The notes beneath the pieces are model-generated. The model was not told the DNA's origin. It worked only from the letters and a program-made list of their open reading frames with translations, and ran no database searches. The translations under genes and the position numbers were made by a program. From the IMG/VR virus record IMGVR_UViG_3300009108_000751, positions 124,001 through 188,000 of that record: a stretch of DNA of 64,000 nt; one strand, given 5' to 3'. This document shows, one piece after another, positions 33,715-55,375 of the stretch (position 1 is its first letter; each line of letters opens with the position of its first letter).

Positions 33715-34083
33715 TTGGATCGTCTTGAGCAGATATTCTGGCTGCAAGAATCATTTATGAAGGTGCTCTCCGACAACAAGGAGAAGCTTCCAGAATGGCC
33801 TGTGGATCCTTCTGACAAGAAAGCCCAGCAGTTTATAAGGGATATTATCCATCGAGGCACAGAGGAGGCTTTCGAAGCTCTCCTCCACCTTAAGAACTGG
33901 AAGCCTCATAAGCACACCGAGGTCAAAGAGTTTGACAGAGATGCTTTTCTCGAGGAAATGGTAGATGATTTCACCTATAAGCTCGAAGCTCTTATTCTAA
34001 TGGGGTTTACACCCGAAGACTTCTTTAAGTCATTCTGCTTGAAAAACGGCAAGAATGTTAATCGTGTAAGAGGTGATTATTAA
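33715..34083 (+). CDS. All-alpha NTP pyrophosphatase (dimeric dUTPase/dCTPase, MazG-like)
   Basis: 'EEAFEAL...NWKPHK', 'LEEMVD', 'KN..N..R'; start at TTG 33715 or GTG 33703. Confidence 0.75.
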   Translation: MDRLEQIFWLQESFMKVLSDNKEKLPEWPVDPSDKKAQQFIRDIIHRGTEEAFEALLHLKNWKPHKHTEVKEFDRDAFLEEMVDDFTYKLEALILMGFTPEDFFKSFCLKNGKNVNRVRGDY

Positions 34084-34092
34084 GTCTTAAGT

Positions 34093-34102
34093 GATATTTA
34101 GT
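34093..34102 (+). promoter_or_regulatory. Putative late promoter (gatatttagt)
   Basis: ATATTTA upstream of the fibre cassette. Confidence 0.6.
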
Positions 34103-34118
34103 ATTGCGAGAGACTATA

Positions 34119-35426
34119 ATGCCCCTTACTCGAATCCGAACAGACGATCTACTGTCAGGTTCTGTAGCTAACGGAACTTTAAATGCGACTGCGATCACCG
34201 GACAAGCTGCTGCAACGTCAGCAGATGACGCTGACTTAGTCCTAATATACGACAACGGCGCTTCTGCTCTTAAAAAGATGACGCGTGCTAATTTTACCGC
34301 AGGCCTCTCAACCACGCTTTCCGGTGCATATGACGCAGGCAGATTTATCACTGCTTCTAATGGCGCCGTTGATATTCAAGTTTCAAGTAATACAAACGCT
34401 CCAACTGAACTGCTCAGGCTTGTAGTATCAGGTAATGTAAGCGGCACCGACTCCGGGCCAAGATTATCTTTCCATGTACCGTACTCAGACACCGCTTACA
34501 TAGGTGCAGCGATTGACGGAATTAAAAGTCAGACGTCAGAGAATAACTCTACAACTGAGTTCCAGTTCTCCACGTCAGATAATAATCAAACCCTTTCGCA
34601 TAACGTAACAATAAATACAAACGGCCTAGCAGTCGCAGGCACCTCGGCCACAGTTCCCACCCTCGGCAGCGAACCTCATGCATTTTATGTCGCGACCACC
34701 GGTGACGGTAGTGCGCTGACTGTTAAAAATAGCAATGGTTACGTAGGCATAGGTGAGACAAGCCCAGATTATAATCTTCACATATCTTCTACAGGAGATG
34801 CGGCGATCTTTATCGAAGCAGACACTGACAATTCAGGCGAGGCGGATAATCCCTTTATAAAGCTTTCGCAAGACAACACAGCAGTGCAATCTATCATAGG
34901 TCTTTGCGGCGCTACTGACAAGGATCCTGAGAATAACACTTACACAGGTGTTGTTAATAACAACATGCTGATAGGAACCACGACAAACTACGGTTTACAG
35001 ATTGGCACCAACGATAACGTAAGGATAACAGTTGAGAACGATGGTGACATTAAGCTAGTATCAACTAAAGACGACACAACATCTTCCTCTGCTAACTTGT
35101 TTATAAATTCAAGCACGGGATTCCTTGCAAGGTCAACCTCGGACAGGCGTCAAAAGAAAGATATAACTGCTATTTCAAGTTCTCTTGATGATCTCTGTAG
35201 GCTTTCTCCTAGGCATTTTTACGACGTCAATGACGAAAACAACGAAGTTAGAATTGCGGGCTTTGTTGCTGATGAAGTTCAACCTGTTTTCCCCGAGCTT
35301 GTACCTGAGAGAGAGCTACCAGAGGAGATCTACAGGTCAGTAGCTTACGATCGACTTGGTGCATATATAGTTAGCGCGATTAAAGAGATAAAGCAGCGAT
35401 TAGAAGCTTTAGAAGGCGGGAGTTAA
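34119..35426 (+). CDS. Tail fibre/spike with C-terminal intramolecular chaperone (peptidase S74)
   Basis: 'SDRRQKKDI', 'GFVADEV..VFPELV', 'VAYD.L...IVSAIKE' coiled coil; 'VGIG...P..LHI' repeat. Confidence 0.85.
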   Translation: MPLTRIRTDDLLSGSVANGTLNATAITGQAAATSADDADLVLIYDNGASALKKMTRANFTAGLSTTLSGAYDAGRFITASNGAVDIQVSSNTNAPTELLRLVVSGNVSGTDSGPRLSFHVPYSDTAYIGAAIDGIKSQTSENNSTTEFQFSTSDNNQTLSHNVTINTNGLAVAGTSATVPTLGSEPHAFYVATTGDGSALTVKNSNGYVGIGETSPDYNLHISSTGDAAIFIEADTDNSGEADNPFIKLSQDNTAVQSIIGLCGATDKDPENNTYTGVVNNNMLIGTTTNYGLQIGTNDNVRITVENDGDIKLVSTKDDTTSSSANLFINSSTGFLARSTSDRRQKKDITAISSSLDDLCRLSPRHFYDVNDENNEVRIAGFVADEVQPVFPELVPERELPEEIYRSVAYDRLGAYIVSAIKEIKQRLEALEGGS

Positions 35427-35428
35427 TA

Positions 35429-37787: not shown

Positions 37788-37816
37788 TTGAACAATATGA
37801 AAATAGTGCATACAAT
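37788..37816 (+). promoter_or_regulatory. sigma70-like promoter TTGAAC-N17-TACAAT
   Basis: Spacing counted; ATG 37823 follows closely. Confidence 0.7.
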
Positions 37817-37822
37817 GCTTAT

Positions 37823-38779
37823 ATGAAAACGCTACCACAGTTGTTCCAGATCCAGGACCAGTTCTCAGAACTATTCCAAAAGAAGGATGACCTTTCCTTG
37901 GAGGAGAGGGAGCGGCTAACACAGGAGTTCTCTCTAGCACTCCACAGTGAGGTGTCAGCCCTGATCAGTGAGATCAACTTTAAGAACCATCATCAGGATC
38001 GTAAGCAGGTGGTGGAGAACAGCATCCTTTTCGAGGGCGTTGATGTCTTCCGATATCTCTTAGCTATCTTAAATCTCTGGGGCTTCAGTGCAGAGGATTT
38101 CTCGCAGGCTTTCGACGACAAGGAGAACTACCTCCAGGTCAAGTATGTCAAGAACGCGCAGAAGTGGCAAGGCCAACCGGTCATCCTCGTGGATGCCGAC
38201 GATGTGATTGTGGAGTTCCGGAAGGGCTACAGTGAGTATCTTAATGCTATGGAAGGCATCGATGTTGACGTCAACTCCAAAGAATATTATTTCACCAACG
38301 GCATTCCAAAGGACCGCTACAATCCTGAGCAACTATTCCAGGATTTCATCGATCAGCGACGCCTCAGAGATTTAGAGCCTATCACGCCCACAATTCAAGC
38401 AATCAACGACTTGTACGACCAGGGCTATTGGATCCAGATTCTTACAGCTAGACCTGACTGGAACAAAACATGCCAGTATGACACTTATACTTGGCTTGAA
38501 AATAGCGGCCTAAAATTCCACAAAATTGACTTTTCGCCTGAGAAGATGATTTGGGCTGCAAATAGTGAGTATTACGATTCTGAGTCGATTGTGTGCGCTA
38601 TTGATGATAGTTCCAAGCACACTATGGAATATGCTAAGCATGGGATCAAAGTGGCATCGCCAGTCACGCCTTATAACGAGGAGTTGCGAGGGGTAGAGAA
38701 CGTCATTATGTTCGAGACAAAGCAAGAACTTGCTGATATCATTAAACAGTTCTCACTCCGGCGCATATTTAGCGTATGA
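37823..38779 (+). CDS. Fusion of an all-alpha NTP-PPase (MazG-like) and a HAD 5'(3')-deoxyribonucleotidase
   Basis: N-terminal 'SEVSAL....NFK.H', 'FEGVDVFRY'; C-terminal 'LVDADDVI', 'ILTARP', 'T..WL', 'AIDDS'. Confidence 0.75.
   Translation: MKTLPQLFQIQDQFSELFQKKDDLSLEERERLTQEFSLALHSEVSALISEINFKNHHQDRKQVVENSILFEGVDVFRYLLAILNLWGFSAEDFSQAFDDKENYLQVKYVKNAQKWQGQPVILVDADDVIVEFRKGYSEYLNAMEGIDVDVNSKEYYFTNGIPKDRYNPEQLFQDFIDQRRLRDLEPITPTIQAINDLYDQGYWIQILTARPDWNKTCQYDTYTWLENSGLKFHKIDFSPEKMIWAANSEYYDSESIVCAIDDSSKHTMEYAKHGIKVASPVTPYNEELRGVENVIMFETKQELADIIKQFSLRRIFSV
38764..38773 (+). promoter_or_regulatory. Putative late promoter (catatttagc)
   Basis: ATATTTA immediately before the start of 38776. Confidence 0.55.
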
Positions 38780-39447
38780 TGCGTATTACAGTTGGACAAT
38801 TACGAACCCTTATAAAGGAAGCAATGCAGGAGCTGAATCCTGATCTTGACCCAGATTGCAAGAGCTTTGCAGTATTTGATTTCGATGAGACGCTGGCACT
38901 GACGGATTCGAAAATTTTGATAACAGATGACCAGGGAAAAAAGATCCGATCTCTTACCCCCGCGCAGTATGCTCTTTATGTTCCCGAGCCGGGAGAGAAC
39001 TTTGACTTTAGTGAATTTGAAATTGTCAAAGACGGTAAACCAACTGCTTTGATGGATGTTCTGCGAGATGTGGCTGCCTGCGGAACCACCGCCGCGGCCA
39101 TTTTAACAGCTCGAGGCCCTAAATCACAAGACCCTATTAGAGAGTTTCTTGCAGACATGGGGGTAAAATTGCAGATAATCGACACTGTAAACACCTCAGA
39201 TCCCCAAGCCAAAGCCCGGAAGATAAAAGGCTACGTTAGATCTTATAGCCCACAAGTCTTGCACTTTTTTGAGGATTCACCTAAGAATCTCGCTGCAGTA
39301 AAGAAGATGGCAGAGTCTGATCGTGAATTTGAGAACGTAGATGTGATTTTGCATAAGATGGTGGATGGCAACAAGGTAGACGTCGAGCACGTCGTGTATA
39401 AAGGATTAAGCGCAATCGCAGCTCCTGAAGATTCAAAACACATTTGA
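38776..39447 (+). CDS. HAD-family phosphatase with N-terminal 'LRTLIKE' tag
   Basis: 'VFDFDETL', 'ILTARG', 'K', 'FFEDSPKN'. Confidence 0.8.
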   Translation: MMRITVGQLRTLIKEAMQELNPDLDPDCKSFAVFDFDETLALTDSKILITDDQGKKIRSLTPAQYALYVPEPGENFDFSEFEIVKDGKPTALMDVLRDVAACGTTAAAILTARGPKSQDPIREFLADMGVKLQIIDTVNTSDPQAKARKIKGYVRSYSPQVLHFFEDSPKNLAAVKKMAESDREFENVDVILHKMVDGNKVDVEHVVYKGLSAIAAPEDSKHI

Positions 39448-39472
39448 ACAACTAGCTTACTCAACATATAAT
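39444..39472 (+). promoter_or_regulatory. sigma70-like promoter TTGAAC-N17-TATAAT
   Basis: Spacing counted; upstream of the ThyX-like gene. Confidence 0.75.
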
Positions 39473-39501: not shown

Positions 39502-40485
39502 TTGCCACAGAACCTTAGTCTTGAGCCCGTTACCCTTCCTATGCCCCTTCGCTTCGGCGAGGAACCACAGACCGAGTTTGTCAATGATCTTGACGCACTG
39601 CGTGTTGAGCTTGTCGATAGTCCAACAGCTGAGCAGATGCGTCATGTGGCATATCGCTACGTGAAGGCAACGTGGGCCGACGCGCCCGAAGATACTGATC
39701 CGATGAATGCAACTCAAAAAGAGTTGTCAGAAACTCTTGAGGACGTGATGCAGTTTCGAGCACTCCCAGCCGGAATGGAGGCTATGAGCTTTACATTCTT
39801 AATCGGCGGGATCGATCTGCAGACCGTCACTCACCTAATCCGTCACCGTGCCGGCACCTTTGCAGCACAATGCACCGGTGATCGCTGGCAGTCGCATAGC
39901 CGAGTACTGGCACCTGCTGCTGTTCAAAACAGCCCGGAAATCTATGGCCGCTGGAAGGACCACATTGAAGCAGGCAAGAAGCTTTACGCAGATATGATCG
40001 ATACTAGGCAGATCAGCATTATGGACGCACGGACCATTCTGCCCCGTGCTATCGAAACCTTCTACTACGCGCGTTTCAACCTGAAAGATCTGATCGGTTT
40101 CATCCGCCAGCGATGTGACAAGCAGATCCAGCCCGCAGCAGACAACCTGATGGCTGCCAAGATGGCTCTGGAAGTTTGCAAGGTTATTCCTGAGGCTGCA
40201 GCCTGCATCGGTACTCGGACCCTTACTGCGCCTGCCATGCACTACGTTCGCAACATGCGCACTGGCACCGGAACCAACCTCTACTGGCCTGATGCCGACA
40301 CCGATGCACACATTGAGTATCACCCCAACGACACCATCTATCAAGCTGAGCGTGATGATGTTAATGGCACCAACCCTCCGCCTGATGAGGCAGGTGAGAA
40401 TAGTAAGTTTCGGCAGCACTGGAATGCGCTTCTCGCACAGATCAGTGACATCGAGATGGAATACAAGGATAAAATGGGTCGCTAA
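39502..40485 (+). CDS. Divergent ThyX-family flavin-dependent enzyme
   Basis: 'E.MSFTF.I.G', 'THLIRHR', 'DAR.ILP', 'F...R'; canonical S-x-R-Y replaced by 'CTGDR'. Confidence 0.8.
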   Translation: MPQNLSLEPVTLPMPLRFGEEPQTEFVNDLDALRVELVDSPTAEQMRHVAYRYVKATWADAPEDTDPMNATQKELSETLEDVMQFRALPAGMEAMSFTFLIGGIDLQTVTHLIRHRAGTFAAQCTGDRWQSHSRVLAPAAVQNSPEIYGRWKDHIEAGKKLYADMIDTRQISIMDARTILPRAIETFYYARFNLKDLIGFIRQRCDKQIQPAADNLMAAKMALEVCKVIPEAAACIGTRTLTAPAMHYVRNMRTGTGTNLYWPDADTDAHIEYHPNDTIYQAERDDVNGTNPPPDEAGENSKFRQHWNALLAQISDIEMEYKDKMGR

Positions 40486-42888: not shown

Positions 42889-43215
42889 ATGCGCTTCGAG
42901 CTTATCACTGAAGAAAACCTTGACGACTATACCGACAACGGTGAGTTTCCTAACTTTGTTCATTATCCCATGAAGAAACTAAGAGAAGATTTCTATGATG
43001 TTAAGAAGAAAGATACACTCATCTTCTGGGGCGCCGAAGGTCACAATATAAAATCGAAGAATGTCACGTTAAAATCCATCGGAAAGTTTGACGGGACGCT
43101 AGAAGAAGCATTAGATGTCTTGAAATCTTCTTTGCCGCCAAGCCAGGTGATGCTTGTTCATACTGAGCACGGTGAGATATACAGAGCAATTGTTCCTCGA
43201 AGGAGAATGAGATGA
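42889..43215 (+). CDS. Hypothetical protein
   Basis: SD, stop overlaps the SDR start. Confidence 0.65.
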   Translation: MRFELITEENLDDYTDNGEFPNFVHYPMKKLREDFYDVKKKDTLIFWGAEGHNIKSKNVTLKSIGKFDGTLEEALDVLKSSLPPSQVMLVHTEHGEIYRAIVPRRRMR

Positions 43216-44180
43216 AATTTGTTATTACAGGTGAAGCCGGTTTTATCGGGCGCAACCTCCCTCTAGCATTTGAGAAGCACGGTCACACGTTTGTTTCACT
43301 ACTTAATCATTCAGCTTTTGTTTGTCTCCCTACAGGTGAGCCCTGTGTGCATCGCAACTCAGAAGATCGCTGGTTCTCTGTCCTGGAAGAGAATGATATC
43401 GACCTGGTGATCCACAATGCAGCCTTGGTAGGCACGGATGTGGTGGCACTAAACCCAAACGAAGCATCCCTAACTAACGTCTCAGGCACACACATCATCT
43501 GTCGTGCAGCAGAACGAGCTGGAGCTGCCGTCTCCTATATGGGCACCACAGTGATCTACAATACTGCGCTTTACCAGCGCATTAAGATCCATGAACGATC
43601 TGAGCATCTACCTAAGACGCTTTACGGCTCTCAAAAGCTTGCGTCAGAATACATCGTTCAGAGTGCATGCACCCGCTGGAATGTTGTTCGCCCGCTCTTC
43701 GCTTACGGCGGCGTGGGTGACATGAACTCTCTGATTGCCAAAACCCTCTACGCTTCTCGTGATGGTCGTGATAGCATCAATATGTTCCTGGATCCGATGA
43801 AGGTGAAAGATTACATGCACGTTACCGACTACTGCGATGCCGTTGCCCTATCCTGCCACCTGCAGATGTGGGGTAGCGACTACAATGTCGCAGCTGAGAA
43901 CCCTTATAACACTCGTGAGATCGTGGAGATGATGTCCGAGGTCTCGGGCCGCGACCTAGAAGAGGTGATCAAATGGCACCCGCACACCGACTACCTCGGA
44001 AACCATCGCCTTCTTTCCAAGAAGTTTAGAGATGCCACGGGATGGGAGCCGAAATACACACTCCTCCAAGGCATTCAGGAATCCTGGGAGTCAATCTTGG
44101 AAGATAGAAGCGGCTACAATCCCCTCGTGTACCTGGATGAAGCAGATAAGCGCGGATTAGATCTCACGCAGTTCTACTAG
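43212..44180 (+). CDS. Divergent NAD-dependent epimerase/dehydratase (extended SDR)
   Basis: 'ITGEAGFIG', 'HNAA', 'YGSQK', 'KDYMHV.D'. Confidence 0.88.
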   Translation: MKFVITGEAGFIGRNLPLAFEKHGHTFVSLLNHSAFVCLPTGEPCVHRNSEDRWFSVLEENDIDLVIHNAALVGTDVVALNPNEASLTNVSGTHIICRAAERAGAAVSYMGTTVIYNTALYQRIKIHERSEHLPKTLYGSQKLASEYIVQSACTRWNVVRPLFAYGGVGDMNSLIAKTLYASRDGRDSINMFLDPMKVKDYMHVTDYCDAVALSCHLQMWGSDYNVAAENPYNTREIVEMMSEVSGRDLEEVIKWHPHTDYLGNHRLLSKKFRDATGWEPKYTLLQGIQESWESILEDRSGYNPLVYLDEADKRGLDLTQFY

Positions 44181-48988: not shown

Positions 48989-51900
48989 GTGTCATTTGAC
49001 GATTTCAAGAAACCTAATCGATTCGTAGGCATGCACGGCCACGATGGTTATTCCACTTACGATGGCCTAGGATACCCAGCAGATCACCTGGACTTTGTCT
49101 TGGAGAACGGCATGGATGCCCTCTCTATTACCAACCACGGTAACTGCAACTCCCTCCCTTTCCTCTGGAAGCACGGCGAGAAACTACGCAAGCAAGGTCG
49201 AAATGTTAGAACCATCTCAGGATGTGAGTTCTATTTTGTTCCATCGCTTAAGGAGTGGGAGAAGCAGTATCAAAACCATCGAGATCGAGTAAAGGCGGAA
49301 CGGGATGCTAAAAAGCAAGAAGCCCTATCTAAGATCGATGTCAATAAAGATGCCGAGGATGATGAGGCTCAGGGGGGCCACGTTATTGAGGATGAGGAAG
49401 CCAGCAAGACTTACGACCCCGACGCCTTGGATTGGAAGCGCCGGTATCACTTAGTTGTCACAGCGCGGAACTTGACCGGCCTGCAAAACCTCTTCAGGTT
49501 AATCAAGCGCTCGTACAAGGAAGGGTTTTATCGGTTTCCACGCATTGACTTTGAAATGTTGAAGGAGCACGGGGAAGGGCTCCAGGTGTCGTCTGCCTGT
49601 CTGGCAGGCATCGCCACTGGAACCGTCTTTAAGGGGCAGGCTCACAAGAAAGATTTTGAGGAGATCATGCGGGATCTCGGTAATCTCACAGATCGCTTTC
49701 ATGATGCGCTAAGTCCGGATCGTTTCTTCTGGGAGATCCAGTTCAACTCCTTGGACGCACAACACACCACAAATCACTACCTGCTAGAGATGGCCAAACG
49801 CCACAACCTTCCTCTCATCGCCACCGCAGACAGTCACTATCCACGACCGGACCTGTGGGAAGCCCGGGAGCTCTACAAGAAGCTCGGCTGGATGCGTGAT
49901 AAGCCCACCCCTCTCCCCACCTTCGACGAGCTCAAGTGTGAGCTTTATCCCAAGAACGCGGAACAGATGTGGGAGGAGTACGGAAGGCATTACACTCAGC
50001 ACGACTTCTACAATGGCACCGAAGACATGGTCCGGCAAGCAATCGAGCGTACACATGACCTGACCTGGAACGAGTTCGAGGACGTCTGGATCGACAGCAA
50101 AGCCAAGCTGCCTAACTACGCCAATCCCCAGCGTTCACACGCGTGCTATCCCGAGCCGCCTGAGGACACCCCGTTCCAGCAGCTAGCTAAGCTGGTCAAG
50201 GCGGCGATGATCCGCGAGGGCCTAGGTGACAAGCCCGAGTACGTCGCGCGTGTCAAGGAGGAGATGGACGACATCAAGTTCCTGGGCTTCGAGAACTACT
50301 TCCTGACCATGTATGACGTGTTCCATCTCGCAGAGAAGAAGACGCTGTTCGGGCCGGCCCGTGGTTCGGGTGGTGGCTCGCTGGTCAACTACCTGCTGGG
50401 CATCACGCAGATCGACCCCCTCCCGTTTGGCCTGCTGTGGTCGCGCTTCCTGGGCCGCCACCGCACGTCCTGGCCTGACATCGACTCTGACGCGGGAGAC
50501 CGCGACGCGCTGATCGATGCAGCTCGAGTCCTCTTTGGAGAGGATGCGGTCATTCCCGTGTCCAACTTCAACACGCTGAAACTCAAGTCCATCGTTAAGG
50601 ATGTGGCCAAGTTCTACCAGATCGACTTCGCCGAAGTGAACCGGATCACTGGTCCCCTCCAGGGTGAGGTGGAACCCTTCGCCCGAGATGCCAACACCGA
50701 GAAGTCCGTCTTTGTGCTCAAGCACGACGACTGTATGAAGTACTCCGATAACTACCGGACCTTTATGGAGAAGTATCCGCACGTGGAGAAGCACGTGAGC
50801 ACGTTGTTTATGGAACAACGAGCCATCGGCCGACATGCTGGGGGCGTCCTCATCGCTGATGAGAATGAGTTAGCCGAGACCATGCCCCTGATCGGTGTGC
50901 GTGGTGAGCTCCAGACCCCCTGGACCGAGGGTATGAACTTCCGGAACCTGGAAGACAACGGTTTCATCAAGTTCGACTTCCTCGGCCTAACCCTAATGAA
51001 GGATGTGGAGAACTGCATCAAGCGCGTCCTGCGGACGCCTGACAATCCTCAGCCTAGCTTTGCGCAGATTAAAGAGTATTTTGACGAGCATCTTAACTGC
51101 CGATATGTCAAGCAGGATGACCCTAAGGTGTGGGAGCACTCCTATCACCATCAGAATTTCGCCCCGGGCCTCTTTCAGTTTACGGCTCAGGGAGCTCGCA
51201 ACTTCTGTCAGCAGGCTAAACCCGATAACATTGAGGAACTAGCGGCCATTACTGCTATCTATCGCCCGGGCCCACTCAAGGCTAATGTCCACATCAAGTA
51301 CGTGGAAGCCAAGAACGACCGGGACAACATTGTCTACGACCACCCCGTGATCGAGCGCGTCCTCGGCCCCACCTGCGGTTTCATCACCTTTCAGGAGCAG
51401 TTCATGACCCTGGCAGTCGAGCTCGCAGGGTTTACTCCCGGTGAGTCTGACAAGATGCGTAAGACGCTGGTGAAGAAGTCCTTAGACACCATCGGTAAGA
51501 AGGGTTCCGAACGTGACCAGCTGCGTAAGCAATTCGTGGAAGGTGCTCAACGCCTCCATGACCTAGATCCCAAGATCACTCACGCGCTTTTCGATAAGAT
51601 CGAGTTCTTCTCCCTTTATGGTTTCAATAAGTCGCACGCCGTGGCTTACGCCATCGATAGCTACTACGCCGCCTGGCTCTACACCTACCATCCCAAGGAG
51701 TGGATCGCTACTGTGCTCCAGTCAGAGAACAACTCCCCTAACGGTCTGGCTAAGACCATCCGGGAGGTCAAGGTCCTGGGTTACAAGTTTGCACCATCGG
51801 ATATCAACTACTCCGGTGAGGAGTGGGATTATAATCCTGAGCGAAAAGCCTTTGTACCTCCCCTGTCTTCTATTAAAGGTGTTGGTGGTAAAGCGATGGA

Positions 51901-52879
51901 GGAGATCATCGAGCATCGTCCTTTCCGCAATCTACGCGAGCTCTTCTTTAATGAGGAGGGTAAGTGGCGTCACTCCAAGGTAAATAAGACCTGCTTCGGT
52001 GCGCTCTGTCAGATTGAGGCTTTCACCTCGCTGCAGGAGTTCCAAGACGGTGACCTTGACAACCATCGCCAGCTCTACCACTTGATCGTTGATAACTACG
52101 AGCAGATCCGAAAGTCGGATGAAGGTAAGAAGAAGTGGTTGGATAAGCTAGAAGCCATCGGTGACAAGAACCGCGAGGAGGTCGATAAGATCATCTCCGT
52201 CTACACCAAGACCAAGATGCCTGAGATGGAGGAAGCCGCTCGATCTCTCGTCCTTGATGCTAATGTGATGGACTGGACTTACATCGATCACTTAGTAGAT
52301 TCCCTCAAGACTATCGAGCACCCTAAACCTCGACGACAGCTCCAGATCGATCGCTGCTTCGAACGGATTGCAAAGAACGGCGATCGTCGTGAAAAGATCC
52401 TTGAGCGCATCGATGCTTTCTTCGATCTAGACGAGGCAATGGGTTCTGTTGCGCACATTGAAGACTGGTCGCGTGATGAGAAGATTCGTCTCTACCAGGA
52501 GATCACGTCTGCTATCAATAATGCGTTGGTCTTTCCTGCCGAGGTGATGAAGCGAATCACCAAGACTGATATGCCCTCTGTCTGTGAGATCCCTGGCGGG
52601 GAGAAGGCTGTTGCTTGGGGTTGCGCCGCCGAGATCCAGAAGAAGACCACCAAGAAGGGTAAAGAGTTCTATCGCCTTCGAATGATCGATGACCAGAACA
52701 GATCTTGCTGGCTTCGAGTATGGGGTAAGTTCTTCGAGTGGGGTGAGGAGCGCGGACAAAAGCTCTACTACGAACCACCCGATTTCTCCTACTGGTTGAT
52801 GGAGGTGGATGTAGATCCTAACTGGGGCGCTTCCACCGCAGCCTTTAAGATGCGCAGGATCCCCCTAGCCGATGATTAA
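48989..52879 (+). CDS. dnaE: DNA polymerase III alpha subunit (family C)
   Basis: PHP 'H.H..YS..DG', 'DSHY'; 'GPARGSGGGSLV.YLLGIT', 'PDIDSD', 'HAGG', 'KFDFLGL', 'YRPGP', 'YGFNKSHA'. Confidence 0.96.
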   Translation: MSFDDFKKPNRFVGMHGHDGYSTYDGLGYPADHLDFVLENGMDALSITNHGNCNSLPFLWKHGEKLRKQGRNVRTISGCEFYFVPSLKEWEKQYQNHRDRVKAERDAKKQEALSKIDVNKDAEDDEAQGGHVIEDEEASKTYDPDALDWKRRYHLVVTARNLTGLQNLFRLIKRSYKEGFYRFPRIDFEMLKEHGEGLQVSSACLAGIATGTVFKGQAHKKDFEEIMRDLGNLTDRFHDALSPDRFFWEIQFNSLDAQHTTNHYLLEMAKRHNLPLIATADSHYPRPDLWEARELYKKLGWMRDKPTPLPTFDELKCELYPKNAEQMWEEYGRHYTQHDFYNGTEDMVRQAIERTHDLTWNEFEDVWIDSKAKLPNYANPQRSHACYPEPPEDTPFQQLAKLVKAAMIREGLGDKPEYVARVKEEMDDIKFLGFENYFLTMYDVFHLAEKKTLFGPARGSGGGSLVNYLLGITQIDPLPFGLLWSRFLGRHRTSWPDIDSDAGDRDALIDAARVLFGEDAVIPVSNFNTLKLKSIVKDVAKFYQIDFAEVNRITGPLQGEVEPFARDANTEKSVFVLKHDDCMKYSDNYRTFMEKYPHVEKHVSTLFMEQRAIGRHAGGVLIADENELAETMPLIGVRGELQTPWTEGMNFRNLEDNGFIKFDFLGLTLMKDVENCIKRVLRTPDNPQPSFAQIKEYFDEHLNCRYVKQDDPKVWEHSYHHQNFAPGLFQFTAQGARNFCQQAKPDNIEELAAITAIYRPGPLKANVHIKYVEAKNDRDNIVYDHPVIERVLGPTCGFITFQEQFMTLAVELAGFTPGESDKMRKTLVKKSLDTIGKKGSERDQLRKQFVEGAQRLHDLDPKITHALFDKIEFFSLYGFNKSHAVAYAIDSYYAAWLYTYHPKEWIATVLQSENNSPNGLAKTIREVKVLGYKFAPSDINYSGEEWDYNPERKAFVPPLSSIKGVGGKAMEEIIEHRPFRNLRELFFNEEGKWRHSKVNKTCFGALCQIEAFTSLQEFQDGDLDNHRQLYHLIVDNYEQIRKSDEGKKKWLDKLEAIGDKNREEVDKIISVYTKTKMPEMEEAARSLVLDANVMDWTYIDHLVDSLKTIEHPKPRRQLQIDRCFERIAKNGDRREKILERIDAFFDLDEAMGSVAHIEDWSRDEKIRLYQEITSAINNALVFPAEVMKRITKTDMPSVCEIPGGEKAVAWGCAAEIQKKTTKKGKEFYRLRMIDDQNRSCWLRVWGKFFEWGEERGQKLYYEPPDFSYWLMEVDVDPNWGASTAAFKMRRIPLADD

Positions 52880-53075
52880 TCCGGGACAACTTGTCAGAAT
52901 CACAAAGACAGCTGTGCAGGACAGTCGCCATCTAAATAAGTTGGGTGTCTTGCTGAAGGATAATGGTGTGGACGATTGTGGCATTCCAGAAGTATATATT
53001 TTAGTCGATGGTGATAGAATATGGGTATACCCAGACGGATATGAGGTGATTGATGATCAAGTTTCCGATCTCTAA
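52872..53075 (+). CDS. Small SH3/KOW-like hypothetical protein
   Basis: 'PGQLVRI...LGVL...ILVDG..W'; resembles 48765. Confidence 0.55.
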   Translation: MINPGQLVRITKTAVQDSRHLNKLGVLLKDNGVDDCGIPEVYILVDGDRIWVYPDGYEVIDDQVSDL

Positions 53076-53961
53076 GGTCGTTCTAGAGGGTTGCGACCTA
53101 AGTGGCAAGACCTCGCTCTATAACTCCATTCATAAGCGATCTGGATTCCGATGGAACATTGATGATAGGTCATCTTTGTCAATGTGCGTCTACGCTAATC
53201 AATATGATCGGGATGATTACTACCTTAGAAAGAACCTCACGATGGAGCTATCTAACCTGAACAATCACTTTGTTCTTCTCCATCCTGACCTGGACGTGAT
53301 TCATAACAGATATCTCGACCGAGGAGATGAGTTCCAGGATGTCGACTCTCTGATCGACCTGCACACAAGGTTCAGCAAGGAGTTTGAAAAGATCTGCATG
53401 TTACCTAACGTTCATGCCTTCACTTCAGGGACGCTGAAGGACCAGGCCGATCGATTGATGAGTAACTTCTCTGACTGGGAAGCAAGGACACCTGAACAGA
53501 TCGGTCGTTTGGCCTATGAGTTCGCCAAGTTCAGCCCGAACCGTGAGTGCACAACGATGCAGTTCCACTTCTACGATGACGGAACCTTTGAGGAGGTGAA
53601 TGACAATATTGAATTTACTCCTGGCGAGGAAGTGTACTACGCTCGAATCAGAGGCAAACTGATCGGAAAGATAGAAGATGAGCTTCGCGGCCGAAACCCT
53701 TATAAGCGCAAGGAGACAGACCAGTCACGAAGGTTTGTGTTCTCCGGAGAGGAATGCATCTCCTTCATCCAGGTTCTCGTTCGGGATGGTTTGATGGATG
53801 TCCACGCTGTATTTCGAAGTTCTGATACAGAGCGCAAGACAGCCACCGACATTCAGCTAATCCATTACCTAGGCAGAGAGGCCTTTAGGTTGCTCAGATT
53901 GAACCCAGATGAATATAAAGTTCGCTTCCGGTTTAACATAAACAGTGCTCACGTACTTTAA
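53053..53961 (+). CDS. Fusion of a dNMP kinase (P-loop) and a thymidylate-synthase/dCMP-hydroxymethylase fold
   Basis: N-terminal 'LEGCDLSGKTSL', 'DR...S..VY'; C-terminal 'SRR', 'CISFIQ', 'FRSSD.......D', 'NINSAHV'. Confidence 0.8.
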   Translation: MIKFPISKVVLEGCDLSGKTSLYNSIHKRSGFRWNIDDRSSLSMCVYANQYDRDDYYLRKNLTMELSNLNNHFVLLHPDLDVIHNRYLDRGDEFQDVDSLIDLHTRFSKEFEKICMLPNVHAFTSGTLKDQADRLMSNFSDWEARTPEQIGRLAYEFAKFSPNRECTTMQFHFYDDGTFEEVNDNIEFTPGEEVYYARIRGKLIGKIEDELRGRNPYKRKETDQSRRFVFSGEECISFIQVLVRDGLMDVHAVFRSSDTERKTATDIQLIHYLGREAFRLLRLNPDEYKVRFRFNINSAHVL

Positions 53962-53963
53962 TC

Positions 53964-53992: not shown

Positions 53993-54037
53993 ACCTTATC
54001 ATTAACTTACGTTCAAGGCACAGAAAGGAAAATAATA

Positions 54038-54382
54038 ATGCGCCTAGCACTAGTAACAATGTTCGCAATCGGTCTGATGGGTTGTCCCGACGACAAGGCA
54101 GCCACCACGGCTGCTGCAACCACCACAACCGGTACCGCCACAATGGCAACTGGTAATGAAGGTACGACTAATACGGAGACCACTGAGGGAACCGAAACGA
54201 ATACCGAAAATACCAACAACACTGGTAGCACCACCAATACAGAAGGTGCTGCTACTGAGACCAATGCAGCCGCGGCCAACGAAGCTGCTGCAGCAGCACC
54301 AACCACGGCAACGGAGGAAACTCCTGCCGCAACGAACACCAACACCGATGAGACGAAAACTACTAACAATAGTAACGACTAA
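54038..54382 (+). CDS. Thr/Asn/Ala/Glu-rich lipoprotein
   Basis: Lipobox 'LMG-C', low-complexity mature part, own promoter and terminator. Confidence 0.75.
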   Translation: MRLALVTMFAIGLMGCPDDKAATTAAATTTTGTATMATGNEGTTNTETTEGTETNTENTNNTGSTTNTEGAATETNAAAANEAAAAAPTTATEETPAATNTNTDETKTTNNSND

Positions 54383-54404
54383 TCAAATCGATTTTGGTAA
54401 TCGT

Positions 54405-54435
54405 GAAGGGGGCCTCTGTGCCCCCTTCTTTATTT
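54405..54435 (+). terminator. Intrinsic terminator
   Basis: gaagggggc-ctctgt-gcccccttc followed by tttattt. Confidence 0.8.
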
Positions 54436-54445
54436 GGAGACAAAA

Positions 54446-55375
54446 ATGACAAGACATGCGCTGGTGACGGGAGCCGCTGGGTTTATAGGATCTAATCTTT
54501 GCCGCAAGCTTTTGCAAGAAGGCTGGAAGGTTACAGGAGTAGACGATCTGAGCAGCGGCCATCTTGAGCTTGTCCAGGGATTAAAAGGGCTGACATTGGT
54601 CGTAAATGACTTCGCTTCTGAACCCATTGTAGAAGCTGTGGAGTCAGGAGACTTTGACGTAGTATTTCACGTCGCCGCAGTGCCACGCGTAAGCTATTCA
54701 GTCGAAAATCCATCAGATACAACTCTTAATAACGTGGCTAAGACAGTAAAGTTAATGGAGTCTTGCAGGGGAAAGATCGATAGGTTTGTATTCTCTTCGT
54801 CTTCGTCAGTCTACGGGGGCGCCGAAGTAATGCCCACACCTATAGATCAGCCTCGAGATCCAAAGTCTCCTTATGCTTGGCAGAAGTCTTCTGTAGAAGA
54901 TCTGCTTAGAATGTTTGGTAATCTATACGATTTCGACTCCGTGTGCCTGCGCTACTTTAATGTGTTTGGACCTAATCAATACGGTGACTCACCCTACTCC
55001 ACAGCCATCTCCGCATGGTGTCACGCTGTAAAAGAAGGATTACCTCTTCGAAAAGACGGCACAGGTGAACAGAGTCGTGATATGTGCTATGTTGACAATG
55101 TTGTAGATGTTAATATACGAGCAGCCAACCACGAAGGTGCACTTAAAGGTGAGGCTTTCAACGTCGCATGCGGTGATCGAACTAGCAACAATGAGATCTT
55201 GGCTGCTTTCGAGTCCCGATTTGGAGATATCGACGTAAAGCAGGCTCCATTTCGACCCGGAGATGTCATGCACACTCAGGCAGATATTTCCGAGACAGAA
55301 AGAGTATTTGGTTACAAGCCCCTTGTAAGATTTTGGGACGGTCTTGAAAAGACGTTTGACTGGTGGGGAATATAG
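54446..55375 (+). CDS. NDP-sugar epimerase/dehydratase (WbpP/GalE-like SDR)
   Basis: 'TGAAGFIG', 'VDDLSSG', 'SSSSVYG', 'PYAWQK', 'LRYFNVFGP', 'RPGDV'. Confidence 0.92.
   Translation: MTRHALVTGAAGFIGSNLCRKLLQEGWKVTGVDDLSSGHLELVQGLKGLTLVVNDFASEPIVEAVESGDFDVVFHVAAVPRVSYSVENPSDTTLNNVAKTVKLMESCRGKIDRFVFSSSSSVYGGAEVMPTPIDQPRDPKSPYAWQKSSVEDLLRMFGNLYDFDSVCLRYFNVFGPNQYGDSPYSTAISAWCHAVKEGLPLRKDGTGEQSRDMCYVDNVVDVNIRAANHEGALKGEAFNVACGDRTSNNEILAAFESRFGDIDVKQAPFRPGDVMHTQADISETERVFGYKPLVRFWDGLEKTFDWWGI

What the first reader, a model, noticed from the sequence alone, without database searches (positions are those of the whole stretch)
33715..55375. Dispersed, apparently undescribed pyrimidine (probably cytosine) DNA-modification pathway
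Seen: alongside a normal trimeric dUTPase, thymidine kinase and dCMP deaminase, the window encodes a kinase/thymidylate-synthase-fold fusion (53053), a remodelled ThyX (39502), an NDT/MilB-type N-glycosidase (41187), two all-alpha NTP pyrophosphatases (33715; 37823, fused to a HAD nucleotidase) and two SDR enzymes (43212, 54446). Several sit behind sigma70-like promoters, and the kinase-TS fusion follows dnaE in one coupled run. Known: T4 replaces C with hmC using a TS-fold dCMP hydroxymethylase, a dNMP kinase and an all-alpha dCTPase. In mildiomycin synthesis a TS-fold CMP hydroxymethylase (MilA) pairs with an NDT-fold hydrolase (MilB). Inference: this phage removes a canonical dNTP and builds a modified pyrimidine nucleotide by a route unlike T4's, possibly with flavin and NAD chemistry or sugar attachment at the nucleotide level, and its own DnaE incorporates it. 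No glycosyltransferase is visible in the window.
Basis: partly seen in the sequence, partly recalled or inferred. Interest (0 to 1): 0.88.

Follow-up and report, generated by a model that had tools for sequence, protein, structure and literature searches.

The report
Phage enzyme set for altered cytosine
An uncultured marine jumbo phage carries a conserved set of nucleotide enzymes, centred on an apparently undescribed kinase fused to a stripped-down thymidylate-synthase-like enzyme, that probably replaces ordinary cytosine in its DNA with a modified form, by the same logic as T4 and RB69 but with new parts.

Summary
The window is part of a 235,681-bp T4-like jumbo phage contig from a marine metagenome, with no cultured relative.

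The centrepiece is the gene at 53053-53961. It encodes a ~125-aa YorR/TMPK-like kinase fused to a ~175-aa minimal thymidylate-synthase (TS) fold (AlphaFold pLDDT 94). Its nearest solved structure is the flavin-dependent dCMP hydroxylase AfhB of phage HY126, followed by T4 dCMP hydroxymethylase, MilA and TS.

In 70 distinct homologues the catalytic Cys, the phosphate-binding arginines and an Asp at the TS Asn177 position (the cytosine-specificity switch) never vary. The folate-binding parts are missing.

The "MazG" at 33640 is a homologue of the T4/RB69 gp56 dCTPase.

In other phage lineages the fused halves are separate neighbouring genes. In one lineage the mini-TS lies inside a typical DNA-glycosylation cluster.

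So the logic is T4/RB69-like rather than "unlike T4", and the enzyme class was described in 2025-2026. This protein family and its fusion were not found in the databases and papers searched here. The product and any sugar attachment remain unproven. No glycosyltransferase was found in the ~94 kb read.

Verdict: new variant of a known kind. Interest 0.72.

The parts
53053..53961 (+). Kinase/mini-TS fusion (302 aa). Residues ~1-125 are a minimal P-loop YorR/TMPK-like nucleotide kinase. Residues ~128-302 are a minimal thymidylate-synthase fold with Cys235, Arg226/227, Arg255-Ser256, Asp266 and His300.
   Evidence: AF2 pLDDT 94.1 for the whole protein and 94.8 for the domain alone. Foldseek with the domain alone: 9iqu AfhB E 4.4e-8, 9iqc 7.6e-7, then TS, T4 dCH and MilA at ~1e-5; with the whole protein: YorR 2axp/3kb2 for the N-terminal half. 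hhalign to RB69 gp48: probability 84%, E 7e-6. Residues invariant in 70 sequences. 345 cluster representatives in 1.84 billion.
33640..34083 (+). gp56-type all-alpha dNTP pyrophosphatase, the candidate dCTPase. The likely start is the ATG at 33715.
   Evidence: phrog_12184, E 7e-11. The family profile aligns with RB69 gp56 dCTPase at probability 95%, E 3.9e-8, over 121 columns up to the shared C-terminal GY. An ExxE...EExxD metal motif is visible in the sequence.
37823..38779 (+). Fusion of a dimeric-dUTPase-type (dUTPase_2) pyrophosphatase with an NT5C-type HAD 5'-deoxynucleotidase. It would take a dNTP to dNMP and then to the deoxynucleoside.
   Evidence: PF08761 25.1 bits (cutoff 22.9). PF06941 20.6 bits (cutoff 24.8). 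PHROG hits. A DxDD HAD motif is visible. In L093 the same two functions are separate genes, on either side of the kinase gene and next to the mini-TS.
38776..39447 (+). Second HAD/PNK-phosphatase-like protein. Its membership in the set is uncertain.
   Evidence: phrog_415, E 3.8e-7 only. Found in 4 related loci.
39502..40485 (+). Remodelled ThyX-family flavoenzyme (327 aa) with an invariant Cys124 and a ~90-aa C-terminal extension.
   Evidence: Pfam Thy1 67 bits. TIGR02170 50 bits, below its 87.9 cutoff. Alignment to T. maritima ThyX: His51/53/59 lost, Arg74 to Thr, Gln75 to His, loop RHRAG[ST]FAAQCTGDR. 1342 homologues. 50% identical in Geobacillus phage GR1.
41187..41624 (+). Nucleoside 2-deoxyribosyltransferase-family enzyme.
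   Evidence: PF05014, E 1.5e-16. 6evs, E 9e-15, with the D..G..WE.G catalytic motif aligned. 41% identical homologue in the GR1 block.
43212..44180 (+). Extended SDR, distantly like dTDP-glucose 4,6-dehydratases and reductases.
   Evidence: PF01370, E 1.7e-22. Best PDB match 6bi4, E 1.7e-17. Present in 41 of 84 loci.
48989..52879 (+). DnaE-type replicative polymerase, directly upstream of the fusion.
   Evidence: PHP, DNA_pol3_alpha, finger and HHH_6 domains. Present upstream of the fusion in 84 of 84 loci. In 57 of them the last aligned DnaE residue is within 600 nt of the fusion's start.
52872..53075 (+). 67-codon ORF bridging dnaE and the fusion; it overlaps both.
   Evidence: It is called as a gene on two public contigs.
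54434..55375 (+). Extended SDR, UDP-hexose/HexNAc 4-epimerase-like.
   Evidence: PF01370, E 4e-51. WbgU, WbpP and 6dnt at E ~1e-49. Below all NCBIfam equivalog cut-offs. Begins within 600 nt of the fusion's end in 57 of the 67 loci where it lies downstream.
26559..27023 (+). Canonical trimeric dUTPase.
   Evidence: PF00692, E 1.1e-22.
59486..60058 (+). TK1-type thymidine kinase.
   Evidence: PF00265, E 4e-38. Present in 68 of 84 loci.
60938..61420 (+). dCMP deaminase.
   Evidence: PF00383, E 1.5e-20. Present in 67 of 84 loci.
37788..37816 (+). Promoter-like site TTGAACA-N16-TACAAT, directly before the dUTPase_2/HAD gene.
   Evidence: This is a consensus match only.
39444..39472 (+). Promoter-like site TTGAACA-N16-TATAAT, directly before the ThyX-like gene.
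   Evidence: This is a consensus match only.
54405..54428 (+). Strong terminator-like hairpin (9 pairs, 7 of them G-C, followed by a T run) between the fusion and SDR2.

Best explanation
The window holds the nucleotide-pool section of a T4-like marine jumbo phage. It most likely replaces dC in phage DNA with a C5-modified cytosine made at the mononucleotide level.

Proposed steps:
1. The gp56-like pyrophosphatase (33640) turns dCTP into dCMP. This removes the canonical triphosphate and supplies substrate. The homology is shown; the substrate is inferred.
2. The mini-TS half of the fusion (53053) binds dCMP, attacks C6 with Cys235, and installs a group at C5. The fold, the catalytic constellation and the cytosine-type Asp266 are shown. 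The reaction is inferred.
   - The folate-binding segments and the TS C-terminus are absent, and the nearest structure is the flavin-dependent dCMP hydroxylase AfhB. Hydroxylation or another folate-independent reaction is therefore more likely than methylation or hydroxymethylation with CH2-THF.
3. The fused kinase half phosphorylates the product on the spot. Host kinases would handle it poorly. This step is inferred from the fusion and from the separate neighbouring kinases in RB69, DLP3, RL38J1, L091 and L093.
4. The adjacent DnaE incorporates the modified nucleotide (inferred).
5. The dUTPase_2/NT5C fusion, the NDT, thymidine kinase, dCMP deaminase, trimeric dUTPase and ThyX-like enzyme drain unwanted deoxynucleotides to nucleosides. 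They recycle the deoxyribose and keep dTTP supplied (inferred).
6. The UDP-sugar 4-epimerase-like SDR next to the fusion hints at later glycosylation of the new base. No transferase was found.
For: **Fold and active site**
- Confident models.
- In the domain-only search 356 PDB chains match at E <= 0.001; the 50 best listed are all TS-superfamily, with AfhB first by about two orders of magnitude, then T4 dCH, MilA and TS.
- hhalign and HMMER place RR, Cys, RS, Asp and SAH of the fusion on the same residues of RB69 gp48/AfhB and T4 dCH.
- A short-TS profile hits only the fusion genes in all the loci, and the mini-TS profile hits short TS genes in return.

**Selection**
- Lys19, Asp38, Arg39, Arg86, Arg90, Arg226, Arg227 and Cys235 are the same in all 70 distinct homologues. 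Arg255, Ser256, Asp266 and His300 are the same in 69 and gapped in one. Overall identity falls to about 30%.

**dCTPase link**
-.

**Literature**
- N177D selects dCMP.
- 5-hydroxy-dCMP synthases are flavin-dependent TS homologues.
- RB69 gp45, DLP3 gp78 (top fold hit YorR 3kb2, the same as here) and RL38J1 gp214 are nucleotide kinases encoded in the same clusters as those synthases (PMC13326640).

**Context**
- DnaE, the fusion and SDR2 are linked across 84 loci whose DnaE identity falls to about 50%, or 38% in one.
- L093 has mini-TS, HAD-NT5C, small kinase, dUTPase_2, DnaE and Thy1 as separate adjacent genes.
- L091 has, in order: kinase, T4-dCH-like TS, mini-TS, an AfhF/AfhE homologue, a cytidylyltransferase-like gene, a GT8-like protein and an SDR.
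- L009 and L077 have the fusion, a QueF-like gene, a cytidylyltransferase-like gene (48% identical to L091's) and SDR2.
- Geobacillus phage GR1 has an NDT, a 5'-deoxynucleotidase, a 'glycosyltransferase', a small kinase, a ThyX-like gene (50% identical) and DnaE.
Against: - No measurement of the DNA exists, and no cultured relative is known.
- The published diagnostic for 5-hydroxy-dCMP synthases, D169N, is not met in this window's protein, which has Asp258. Across the family that position is D in 33, N in 26 and E in 10.
- The cofactor pocket cannot be identified.
- L091 and L093 carry a conventional T4-dCH-like TS beside the mini-TS. There the mini-TS is not the only, and perhaps not the first, modifying enzyme.
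- No glycosyltransferase or second TS was found in the window or in about 30 kb downstream.
- The phage encodes Fpg/Nei-type and HhH-GPD-type glycosylases. Cellular relatives of these excise 5-hydroxycytosine (the substrate range is from my own knowledge).
- Synteny within one phage clade is largely inherited and does not prove coupling.
- Trimeric dUTPase, TK, dCMP deaminase and a ThyX-family enzyme are also a perfectly ordinary dTTP supply set.
Confidence: 0.5

Rival explanations
1. This is ordinary pool management and the DNA is unmodified. The set only balances and salvages deoxynucleotides for a large, fast-replicating genome. dUTPases keep U out of DNA. dCMP deaminase plus the ThyX-like enzyme make dTMP. 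The nucleotidase, NDT and TK recycle host deoxynucleosides. The fusion is a dCMP/dTMP kinase whose TS-like half only binds or senses a pyrimidine nucleotide.
For: - Every accessory enzyme has an ordinary role.
- The ThyX-like protein is strongly conserved, at 55-70% identity, like a housekeeping enzyme.
- No glycosyltransferase was found.
- Synteny within a clade can be inherited.
Against: - An invariant Cys nucleophile, together with Glu210, Arg226/227, Arg255-Ser256, Asp266 and His300, persists across about 30% identity. That is hard to explain for a mere binding module.
- Asp at the Asn177 position is the signature of cytosine-modifying TS homologues, not of dTMP synthesis.
- A gp56-type dCTPase is, to my knowledge, typical of T-even-type phages that exclude dC.
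- In L091 the mini-TS sits inside a cluster with an AfhE/F homologue, a GT8-like protein and a T4-dCH-like TS.
Confidence: 0.27
2. The mini-TS is a second-step enzyme. It acts on a pyrimidine nucleotide that already carries a one-carbon group, such as 5-hydroxymethyl-dCMP. That precursor would come from a conventional TS homologue elsewhere in the genome or from the remodelled ThyX-like enzyme. Cys addition at C6 expels the hydroxyl, and another nucleophile is captured, giving a 5-(X-methyl)cytosine nucleotide. The fused kinase then phosphorylates it.
For: - It explains why the folate-binding elements and the C-terminus are dispensable.
- It explains why L091 and L093 keep a T4-dCH-like TS next to the mini-TS.
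- It explains why the D169-equivalent residue, a cofactor contact in TS, is free to vary.
- The ThyX-like enzyme has an unusual invariant Cys and has lost conserved histidines.
Against: - It is pure chemical reasoning. No such enzyme is known to me.
- No conventional TS was seen in the roughly 94 kb read of this phage, or within 10 kb of the fusion in 84 loci.
- The nearest structure is a first-step hydroxylase.
Confidence: 0.13
3. The modified base derives from thymine or uracil, not from cytosine. The remodelled ThyX-like enzyme makes a non-methyl C5 product from dUMP, for example 5-hydroxymethyl-dUMP. The nucleotidase/pyrophosphatase fusion removes dTTP.
For: - The ThyX-like enzyme scores below the ThyX equivalog cutoff and has a rebuilt substrate loop.
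- It travels with an NDT, a 5'-deoxynucleotidase, a small kinase and an annotated glycosyltransferase in the unrelated phage GR1, which has no mini-TS in the block I examined.
Against: - A canonical TK1-type thymidine kinase, dCMP deaminase and trimeric dUTPase argue for normal dTTP use.
- The fusion's Asp266 points to cytosine.
Confidence: 0.1

Closest known systems
5-hydroxy-dCMP synthase of phages HY126 (AfhB, PDB 9iqu/9iqc), RB69 (gp48) and DLP3 (gp80), with the kinases encoded in the same clusters (RB69 gp45, DLP3 gp78)
   Same: - TS fold, and the nearest solved structure.
- Cys nucleophile, RR, RS, Asp at the N177 position and the SAH motif all align.
- Both end shortly after that His, without the long TS C-terminus.
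- A YorR/TMPK-like kinase partner is encoded in the same cluster; here it is fused.
- A gp56-type dCTPase is present in the genome.
- NDP-sugar enzymes lie nearby.
   Different: - About 50-60 residues shorter.
- 8 rather than about 25 residues between RR and Cys.
- No Pfam PF00303 signal.
- The D169N diagnostic is not met in this window (Asp258).
- Fused to the kinase.
- Sits next to DnaE rather than a family-B polymerase.
- No arabinose genes (the AfhE/F type) and no DNA glycosyltransferase were found in the part of this phage that I read.
T4 pathway: gp56 dCTPase, gp42 dCMP hydroxymethylase, gp1 dNMP kinase, glucosyltransferases
   Same: - The same outline: hydrolyse dCTP, modify dCMP at C5 with a TS-fold Cys enzyme, phosphorylate, incorporate.
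- Asp at both the D169 and N177 positions, as in gp42.
- The phage has T4-like structural genes.
   Different: - The folate-binding elements are missing.
- The kinase is YorR/TMPK-like and fused, not gp1-like.
- The polymerase is DnaE.
- No glucosyltransferase was seen.
MilA/MilB of mildiomycin biosynthesis
   Same: MilA is a TS-fold, cytosine-specific C5 hydroxymethylase, and it appears among the fold hits. An NDT-fold gene is present in the window.
   Different: - MilA ranks below AfhB and is about 140 aa longer than the mini-TS domain.
- The window's NDT matches a true nucleoside deoxyribosyltransferase (6evs). It gave no hit to MilB at E <= 1.
- It lies about 11 kb from the fusion.
Flavin-dependent thymidylate synthase ThyX
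   Same: Pfam Thy1 scores above its gathering score. Arg78, His79, Arg80, Arg147 and Arg174 are kept.
   Different: - Below the TIGR02170 cutoff.
- His51/53/59 are lost.
- The substrate loop is lengthened by two residues, with an invariant Cys where ThyX has Ser88.
- There is a ~90-aa C-terminal extension.
Bifunctional DHFR-TS of protozoa
   Same: A TS-fold enzyme fused to the enzyme of a neighbouring metabolic step.
   Different: The partner is a kinase, not DHFR. The TS half is minimal and cytosine-type. The similarity is in architecture only.

Membership tests
Thymidylate synthase superfamily (ThyA / dCMP hydroxymethylase fold) | TS alpha/beta fold with the five-stranded core sheet | tested here: met
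   Domain model pLDDT 94.8. 356 PDB matches at E <= 0.001 and TMq 0.43-0.57 among the 50 best listed, all TS-superfamily.
Thymidylate synthase superfamily (ThyA / dCMP hydroxymethylase fold) | Catalytic Cys (E. coli C146), with phosphate-binding R126'/R127' and R166-S167 and the H207 motif | tested here: met
   Cys235, Arg226/227, Arg255-Ser256 and His300 align with these residues. They do not vary among 70 sequences.
Thymidylate synthase superfamily (ThyA / dCMP hydroxymethylase fold) | Folate-binding segment (residues ~66-125, W80/W83) and the C-terminal tail that closes over the cofactor | tested here: not met
   The protein ends 2 residues after His300. The domain is about 175 aa, against 264 in E. 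coli TS. There are only 8 residues between RR and Cys.
Thymidylate synthase superfamily (ThyA / dCMP hydroxymethylase fold) | Recognised by Pfam PF00303 | tested here: not met
   No PF00303 hit at E <= 0.01. No NCBIfam hit, and PHROGs matched only the kinase half.
5-hydroxy-dCMP synthase (AfhB / RB69 gp48 type) | N177D (cytosine specificity) | tested here: met
   Asp266 aligns with the Asp of RB69 gp48 and with D179 of T4 dCH. It is Asp in 69 of 70 sequences and a gap in one.
5-hydroxy-dCMP synthase (AfhB / RB69 gp48 type) | D169N, the published diagnostic residue (PMC13326640) | tested here: not met
   The window has Asp258 (RSSD against RSQN). The family shows D in 33, N in 26 and E in 10.
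5-hydroxy-dCMP synthase (AfhB / RB69 gp48 type) | Acidic residue at L143 (three residues before the Cys) | tested here: inconclusive
   The window has Gly-Glu-Glu-Cys, which is acidic at -2 and -1 but not at -3. Across the family, position -3 is D in 31, S in 13, G in 8, Q in 8, N in 5 and E in 3. The loop is shorter, so the register is uncertain.
5-hydroxy-dCMP synthase (AfhB / RB69 gp48 type) | Bound flavin and O2-dependent hydroxylation | not testable with these tools
   This needs purified protein.
5-hydroxy-dCMP synthase (AfhB / RB69 gp48 type) | Cluster also encodes a DNA glycosyltransferase and sugar-activation genes | tested here: inconclusive
   - An SDR 4-epimerase-like gene is adjacent.
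- A PMM lies about 27 kb downstream.
- No glycosyltransferase was found in about 94 kb.
- One GT2 and one GT8 occur among 112 accessory ORF clusters within 10 kb in relatives, but I could not locate them.
T4 gp56-type dCTPase (all-alpha NTP pyrophosphatase) | Full-length homology to gp56, with the metal-binding ExxE...ExxD helices | tested here: met
   hhalign probability 95%, E 3.9e-8, 121 columns. The motif is invariant in 14 homologues. Substrate was not tested.
ThyX (flavin-dependent thymidylate synthase) | Equivalog-level score and the RHRxxSxxxxSxR motif with the conserved histidines | tested here: not met
   TIGR02170 gives 50.1 bits against a cutoff of 87.9. The loop is RHRAG[ST]FAAQCTGDR, and His51/53/59 are replaced. 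It is a Pfam family-level member only.
Nucleoside 2-deoxyribosyltransferase (PF05014) | Family score above the cutoff and the catalytic Glu in the D..G..(F/W)E.G motif | tested here: met
   61 bits against a cutoff of 28.8. DLGTIWEAG aligns with the DTGTAWELG motif of 6evs. Transferase versus hydrolase activity cannot be told from sequence.
MilB / DNPH1-type nucleotide N-glycosidase | Closer to MilB or DNPH1 than to true NDTs | tested here: not met
   Only the NDTs 6evs and 1s2d were hit in the PDB at E <= 1.
UDP-hexose 4-epimerase (extended SDR) | Equivalog-level match to a named epimerase | tested here: inconclusive
   WbgU and WbpP at E ~1e-49. GalE gives 157.6 bits against a cutoff of 262. 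This is a family-level assignment only.

The most novel reading that the evidence does not exclude
[quoted passage not shown] It may form a composite active site with its own truncated kinase. It would make a cytosine nucleotide that is none of 5-methyl-, 5-hydroxymethyl- or 5-hydroxy-dC, for instance by exchanging the leaving group on a 5-substituted precursor supplied by the Cys-bearing ThyX-like enzyme. A widespread clade of uncultured marine jumbo phages would then carry a DNA base not yet described.
Probability: 0.2. Interest if true: 0.92.

Novelty: new variant of a known kind. Interest (0 to 1): 0.72.

Why it matters
TS-superfamily enzymes are the entry point to nearly all known pyrimidine hypermodifications in phage DNA. 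These modifications decide how phages fare against restriction, CRISPR and type IV systems.

This family is recognised as a TS relative by none of Pfam, NCBIfam or PHROGs, and it gave no hit in 50,697 deposited phage genomes. It is nonetheless common in ocean metagenomes: 345 cluster representatives, on contigs of up to 200-300 kb.

If it is active, three things follow:
- It extends the known ways of making non-canonical cytosine.
- It gives a ready-made two-step enzyme (modify, then phosphorylate) for making modified DNA.
- It marks a large group of marine jumbo phages as having modified genomes. That would affect how their DNA is sequenced, cloned and quantified.

The linked ThyX-like family, with its invariant Cys, is a second open question that can be tested directly.

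Tried and rejected
**Searches for relatives**
- Nucleotide and protein searches of 50,697 phage records found no close relative. The best DnaE match is 28% identical, and the fusion gave no hit.
- Sequence-only PDB searches recognised only the YorR-like half of the fusion. They found nothing for the 33640 or 37823 proteins.
- BFVD holds no protein that covers both halves of the fusion.
- I found no paper describing a kinase/TS-homologue fusion of this kind in phages. I found no paper on Geobacillus phage GR1. No supplementary files for PMC13326640 were available to check which IMG/VR sequences that study tested.

**Hunt for a glycosyltransferase**
- Pfam and PHROGs on every unassigned ORF of 100 aa or more between 38 and 63 kb.
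- ESM Atlas on the 468-aa ORF at 56110 gave nothing.
- ESM Atlas on the 377-aa ORF at 46650 gave a DUF6267-like family that is often fused to cytidylyltransferase-like domains. Because of this I no longer count the minus-strand nucleotidyltransferase at 47780 as sugar activation.
- I walked about 30 kb downstream of the window.
- tblastn with the L091 GT8-like protein and the GR1 'glycosyltransferase' against all loci found nothing.
- I pooled 112 accessory ORF clusters from relatives into one Pfam scan. It showed one GT2 and one GT8.
- The ten ORFs nearest the fusion, which I then scanned, were not those two.
- About 124 kb upstream and about 19 kb at the far end of the 235,681-bp contig remain unread.

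**Other checks**
- The idea that short conventional TS genes generally travel with the mini-TS is rejected. None of 80 short-TS loci holds a separate mini-TS.
- Promoter enrichment is rejected: 22 sites against 19.4 +/- 4 expected.
- I could not inspect the model coordinates, so the cofactor pocket and the interface between the two domains were not examined.

Full report
**Where the window comes from.**
- The fusion gene matches IMG/VR contig IMGVR_UViG_3300009108_000751 (JGI Ga0117920_1000015, 235,681 bp) at 100% identity. The window corresponds to about 124,001-188,000 of that contig.
- The left half of the window encodes T4-type structural proteins: Gp23 capsid, gp19 tube, gp15-like protein and baseplate.
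- No deposited phage is close. Megablast found only a 69-nt stretch. The best DnaE match is 28% identical, to a Moorella phage.
- All homologues of the key proteins come from metagenomes, many of them marine (Tara).

**Checking the observation.**
- Trimeric dUTPase at 26559-27023.
- Thymidine kinase at 59486-60058 and dCMP deaminase at 60938-61420.
- An all-alpha pyrophosphatase at 33640/33715-34083.
- A dUTPase_2 plus NT5C-type HAD fusion at 37823-38779.
- A ThyX-family protein at 39502-40485.
- An NDT-family protein at 41187-41624.
- Two extended SDRs at 43212-44180 and 54434-55375.
- DnaE at 48989-52879.
- The 302-aa protein at 53053-53961.

A 67-codon ORF overlaps the dnaE stop, and its end overlaps the fusion's start. 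The fusion's ATG follows a GAGGTGA ribosome-binding site, so the 'coupled run' is real.

Sigma-70-like sites are no more frequent than chance: 22 found against 19.4 +/- 4.0 expected. Two near-identical sites, TTGAACA-N16/17-TA(T/C)AAT, do lie directly before 37823 and 39502. I built that pattern from those two sites, so its chance estimate is circular.

**The fusion protein.**
- Sequence libraries see only a faint kinase signal.
- With an alignment of 28 homologues, AlphaFold gives pLDDT 94.1 and pTM 0.89. The C-terminal domain modelled alone gives pLDDT 94.8.
- Foldseek matches the N-terminal ~125 residues to SPbeta YorR (2axp, 3kb2) and to phage thymidylate kinases.
- The C-terminal ~175 residues match the thymidylate-synthase superfamily. 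Phage HY126 dCMP hydroxylase AfhB comes first (9iqu, E 4.4e-8, TMq 0.56; 9iqc, E 7.6e-7). TS, T4 dCMP hydroxymethylase and MilA follow at about 1e-5.
- Profile comparisons agree. hhalign to RB69 gp48 gives probability 84%, E 7e-6. The three best PDB sequence hits are AfhB (two entries) and T4 dCH.
- Profiles also find each other in both directions.

These alignments place the fusion's residues as follows:

| Fusion residue | E. coli TS equivalent |
|---|---|
| Arg226-Arg227 | R126'/R127' |
| Cys235 | C146, the nucleophile |
| Arg255-Ser256 | R166-S167 |
| Asp258 | D169 |
| Asp266 | N177 |
| Ser298-Ala-His300 | the H207 motif |

In 70 distinct homologues drawn from 84 loci, none of these varies except Asp258. 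That position is D in 33, N in 26 and E in 10. The kinase residues Lys19, Asp38, Arg39, Arg86 and Arg90 are also invariant.

Asp at the N177 position is the established switch to dCMP. It is shared by T4 gp42, MilA and the 5-hydroxy-dCMP synthases (PMC13326640).

What is missing is equally clear:
- The protein stops two residues after His300.
- Only 8 residues separate RR from Cys.
- The TS segment that carries the folate-contacting tryptophans is absent.

The family has 345 representatives among 1.84 billion. Most are ~300-aa fusions. Some are complete 165-190-aa stand-alone mini-TS proteins.

**The accessory enzymes.**
- *33640 protein.* Its family aligns end to end with RB69 gp56, the dCTPase of the T-even pathway (probability 95%, E 3.9e-8). 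It keeps the ExxE...EExxD helices.
- *37823 protein.* It joins a dimeric-dUTPase-type domain to a DxDD HAD of the NT5C deoxynucleotidase type. It could take a deoxynucleoside triphosphate all the way to the nucleoside.
- *NDT.* It is closest to a true nucleoside deoxyribosyltransferase (6evs, E 9e-15), and the catalytic Glu motif aligns. MilB was not hit, so I do not support the 'MilB-type' label.
- *SDR2.* It resembles the UDP-HexNAc/hexose 4-epimerases WbgU and WbpP (E ~1e-49) but is below every equivalog cutoff. SDR1 is a distant relative of dTDP-glucose dehydratases.
- *ThyX-like protein.* It is a family member by Pfam but scores 50 bits against the 87.9-bit ThyX equivalog cutoff.
  - Against T. 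maritima ThyX it keeps Arg78, His79, Arg80, Arg147 and Arg174.
  - It has lost His51, His53 and His59.
  - It has Thr and His in place of Arg74 and Gln75.
  - Its substrate loop is two residues longer, with an invariant Cys where ThyX has Ser88.
  - It carries a ~90-aa C-terminal extension.
  - I cannot tell whether it still makes dTMP.

**Do the genes belong together?** Within the clade the answer is yes, but that evidence is weak on its own.
- All 84 loci have DnaE upstream of the fusion. In 57 of them the last aligned DnaE residue is within 600 nt of the fusion's start.
- SDR2 follows in 67 loci, within 600 nt in 57 of them.
- TK, the DHH phosphoesterase, dCMP deaminase and SOD follow in 59-68 loci.
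- The gp56-like, dUTPase_2/HAD, ThyX-like and NDT genes lie upstream wherever the 10-kb flank reaches them.
- In relatives the gp56-like gene directly precedes the dUTPase_2/HAD gene. In this window two tail-fibre genes (34104-37777) are inserted between them.

The stronger evidence comes from unrelated lineages.
- *L093.* In order, its genes are: dCMP deaminase, a 214-aa TS, a 298-aa unknown, a stand-alone mini-TS, a HAD/NT5C, a small TMPK-like kinase, a dUTPase_2, DnaE and a 322-aa Thy1 protein. Its small kinase is homologous to the N-terminal half of the fusion in more than 40 loci. So both fusions of this window exist elsewhere as separate neighbouring genes.
- *L091.* In order, its genes are: a TMPK-like kinase; a 221-aa TS with the T4-dCH signature (RSCD, ND, and Asp three residues before Cys); a stand-alone mini-TS; a protein homologous to RB69 gp51 and gp52 (the AfhF and AfhE sugar-activation enzymes); a cytidylyltransferase-like protein; a 299-aa protein whose nearest ESM Atlas clusters are GT8-type glycosyltransferases (scores 0.96-0.97); and an SDR epimerase. 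That is a typical DNA-glycosylation cluster with the mini-TS inside it.
- *L009 and L077.* In these close relatives of the window (79% identity), a QueF-like gene and a cytidylyltransferase-like gene lie between the fusion and SDR2. The latter is 48% identical to the L091 gene.
- *Geobacillus phage GR1.* It carries a 50%-identical ThyX-like gene although its DnaE is only 21% identical. The surrounding block holds an NDT (41% identical), a YfbR-type 5'-deoxynucleotidase, an annotated glycosyltransferase, a small kinase homologous to the fusion's N-terminal half, and a nitroreductase-type flavoprotein.

**Comparison with what is known.**
- The outline is that of T4 and RB69: dCTPase, then a TS-fold dCMP modifier, then a kinase, then the polymerase.
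- Lee et al. 2026 (PMC13326640) showed that RB69 gp48, DLP3 gp80 and other TS homologues make 5-hydroxy-dCMP with a flavin and O2.
- They also showed that N177D, an acidic L143 and D169N mark these enzymes.
- They showed further that the clusters also encode a YorR- or TMPK-like 'nucleotide kinase' and sugar-activation genes.
- The crystal structures of the HY126 enzyme are the top fold hits here.
- This window's enzyme shares the fold, the nucleotide site, the truncated C-terminus and the kinase partnership.
- It fails the D169N test, is much smaller, is fused, and is invisible to PF00303.
- I therefore treat it as working like these enzymes but not as a member of the 5-hydroxy-dCMP synthase family. 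The product is unknown.

**What argues against a modified genome.**
- Nothing here measures DNA.
- No glycosyltransferase and no second TS homologue were found in the window or in about 30 kb downstream.
- That downstream stretch holds a tubulin-like protein, a pterin-4a-carbinolamine dehydratase, ClpB, an Fpg/Nei glycosylase, GroEL, a phosphomannomutase, a NUDIX protein, an HhH-GPD protein, a PEP-utilising enzyme and FtsH.
- About 143 kb of the contig was not read.
- The presence of a conventional T4-dCH-like TS next to the mini-TS in L091 and L093 shows that the mini-TS need not be the first modifying enzyme. It may carry out a second step.
- The Fpg/Nei and HhH-GPD glycosylases would sit awkwardly with a bare 5-hydroxycytosine genome.
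- The accessory enzymes also make sense as ordinary dTTP supply and salvage.

**Verdict.**
- My best reading is pre-replicative replacement of dC by a C5-modified cytosine. It would use a new minimal TS-fold enzyme fused to its kinase (confidence 0.5).
- Rivals: an ordinary pool-management set (0.27), a second-step role for the mini-TS (0.13), and a uracil-derived modification made by the ThyX-like enzyme (0.10).
- It is a new variant of a known kind. Interest 0.72.

Noticed in passing
window 39502-40485; L086 9001-9969; L001 3088-4080; L093 13773-14741: The 320-330-aa ThyX-like family has an invariant Cys at the position HMMER aligns with Ser88 of T. maritima ThyX. It lacks three conserved histidines and has a conserved ~90-aa C-terminal extension. 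It is 50% identical between a marine jumbo phage and a thermophilic Geobacillus phage whose DnaE proteins are only 21% identical. That pattern suggests horizontal transfer of a specialised enzyme.
   Followed up: partly
window 34104-37777: Two tail-fibre-like genes lie between the gp56-like gene and the dUTPase_2/HAD gene. One carries a Peptidase_S74 intramolecular chaperone domain. In relatives the two flanking genes are adjacent.
   Followed up: partly
window 54038-54382 and 54405-54428: A 114-codon ORF encodes a lipoprotein-type signal (MRLALVTMFAIGLMGC) followed by a Thr/Ala/Asn/Glu-rich low-complexity tail. The strongest terminator-like hairpin of the region follows it, between the fusion and SDR2. 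Relatives have other genes, or nothing, at this position.
   Followed up: no
window 46650-47783 (+) and 47780-48451 (-): This is a convergent gene pair. One gene encodes a DUF6267-like protein, whose family is often fused to cytidylyltransferase-like domains and distantly resembles RNA ligases in fold. The other encodes a cytidylyltransferase/NMN-adenylyltransferase-like protein. This is probably a separate nucleotidyl-transfer function, not sugar activation.
   Followed up: partly
L009 9482-9901 and 17969-18811: A close relative (79% identical fusion) has a QueF-like nitrile reductase gene right after the fusion, which hints at 7-deazaguanine chemistry in some members. Its GMP-reductase/IMPDH homologue is interrupted by a Hint (intein) domain.
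   Followed up: no
L057 10933-11721: In one distant relative an N6/N4 DNA methyltransferase (PF01555, E 6e-43) takes the place directly after the fusion, where SDR2 usually sits.
   Followed up: no
L088/L089/L095 (contig ~188-217 kb, downstream of the window): The phage carries an unusual load of chaperones and proteases: ClpP is in the window at 31888, and ClpB, GroEL and FtsH are downstream, with DnaJ/DnaK in relatives. It also carries a tubulin-like protein, a pterin-4a-carbinolamine dehydratase conserved across the clade, a eukaryotic-type phosphomannomutase, a PEP-utilising enzyme, and Fpg/Nei and HhH-GPD DNA glycosylases.
   Followed up: partly
window 57563-58588 and 61750-62436: A GMP reductase/IMPDH-family enzyme (PF00478, E 5e-109) and an Fe/Mn superoxide dismutase are encoded in the same gene run. 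The SOD is conserved in 64 of 84 related loci.
   Followed up: no
window 42347-42874: A 175-aa protein with no family match is 82-83% identical in relatives whose other proteins are 60-79% identical. It appears to be under unusually strong constraint.
   Followed up: no
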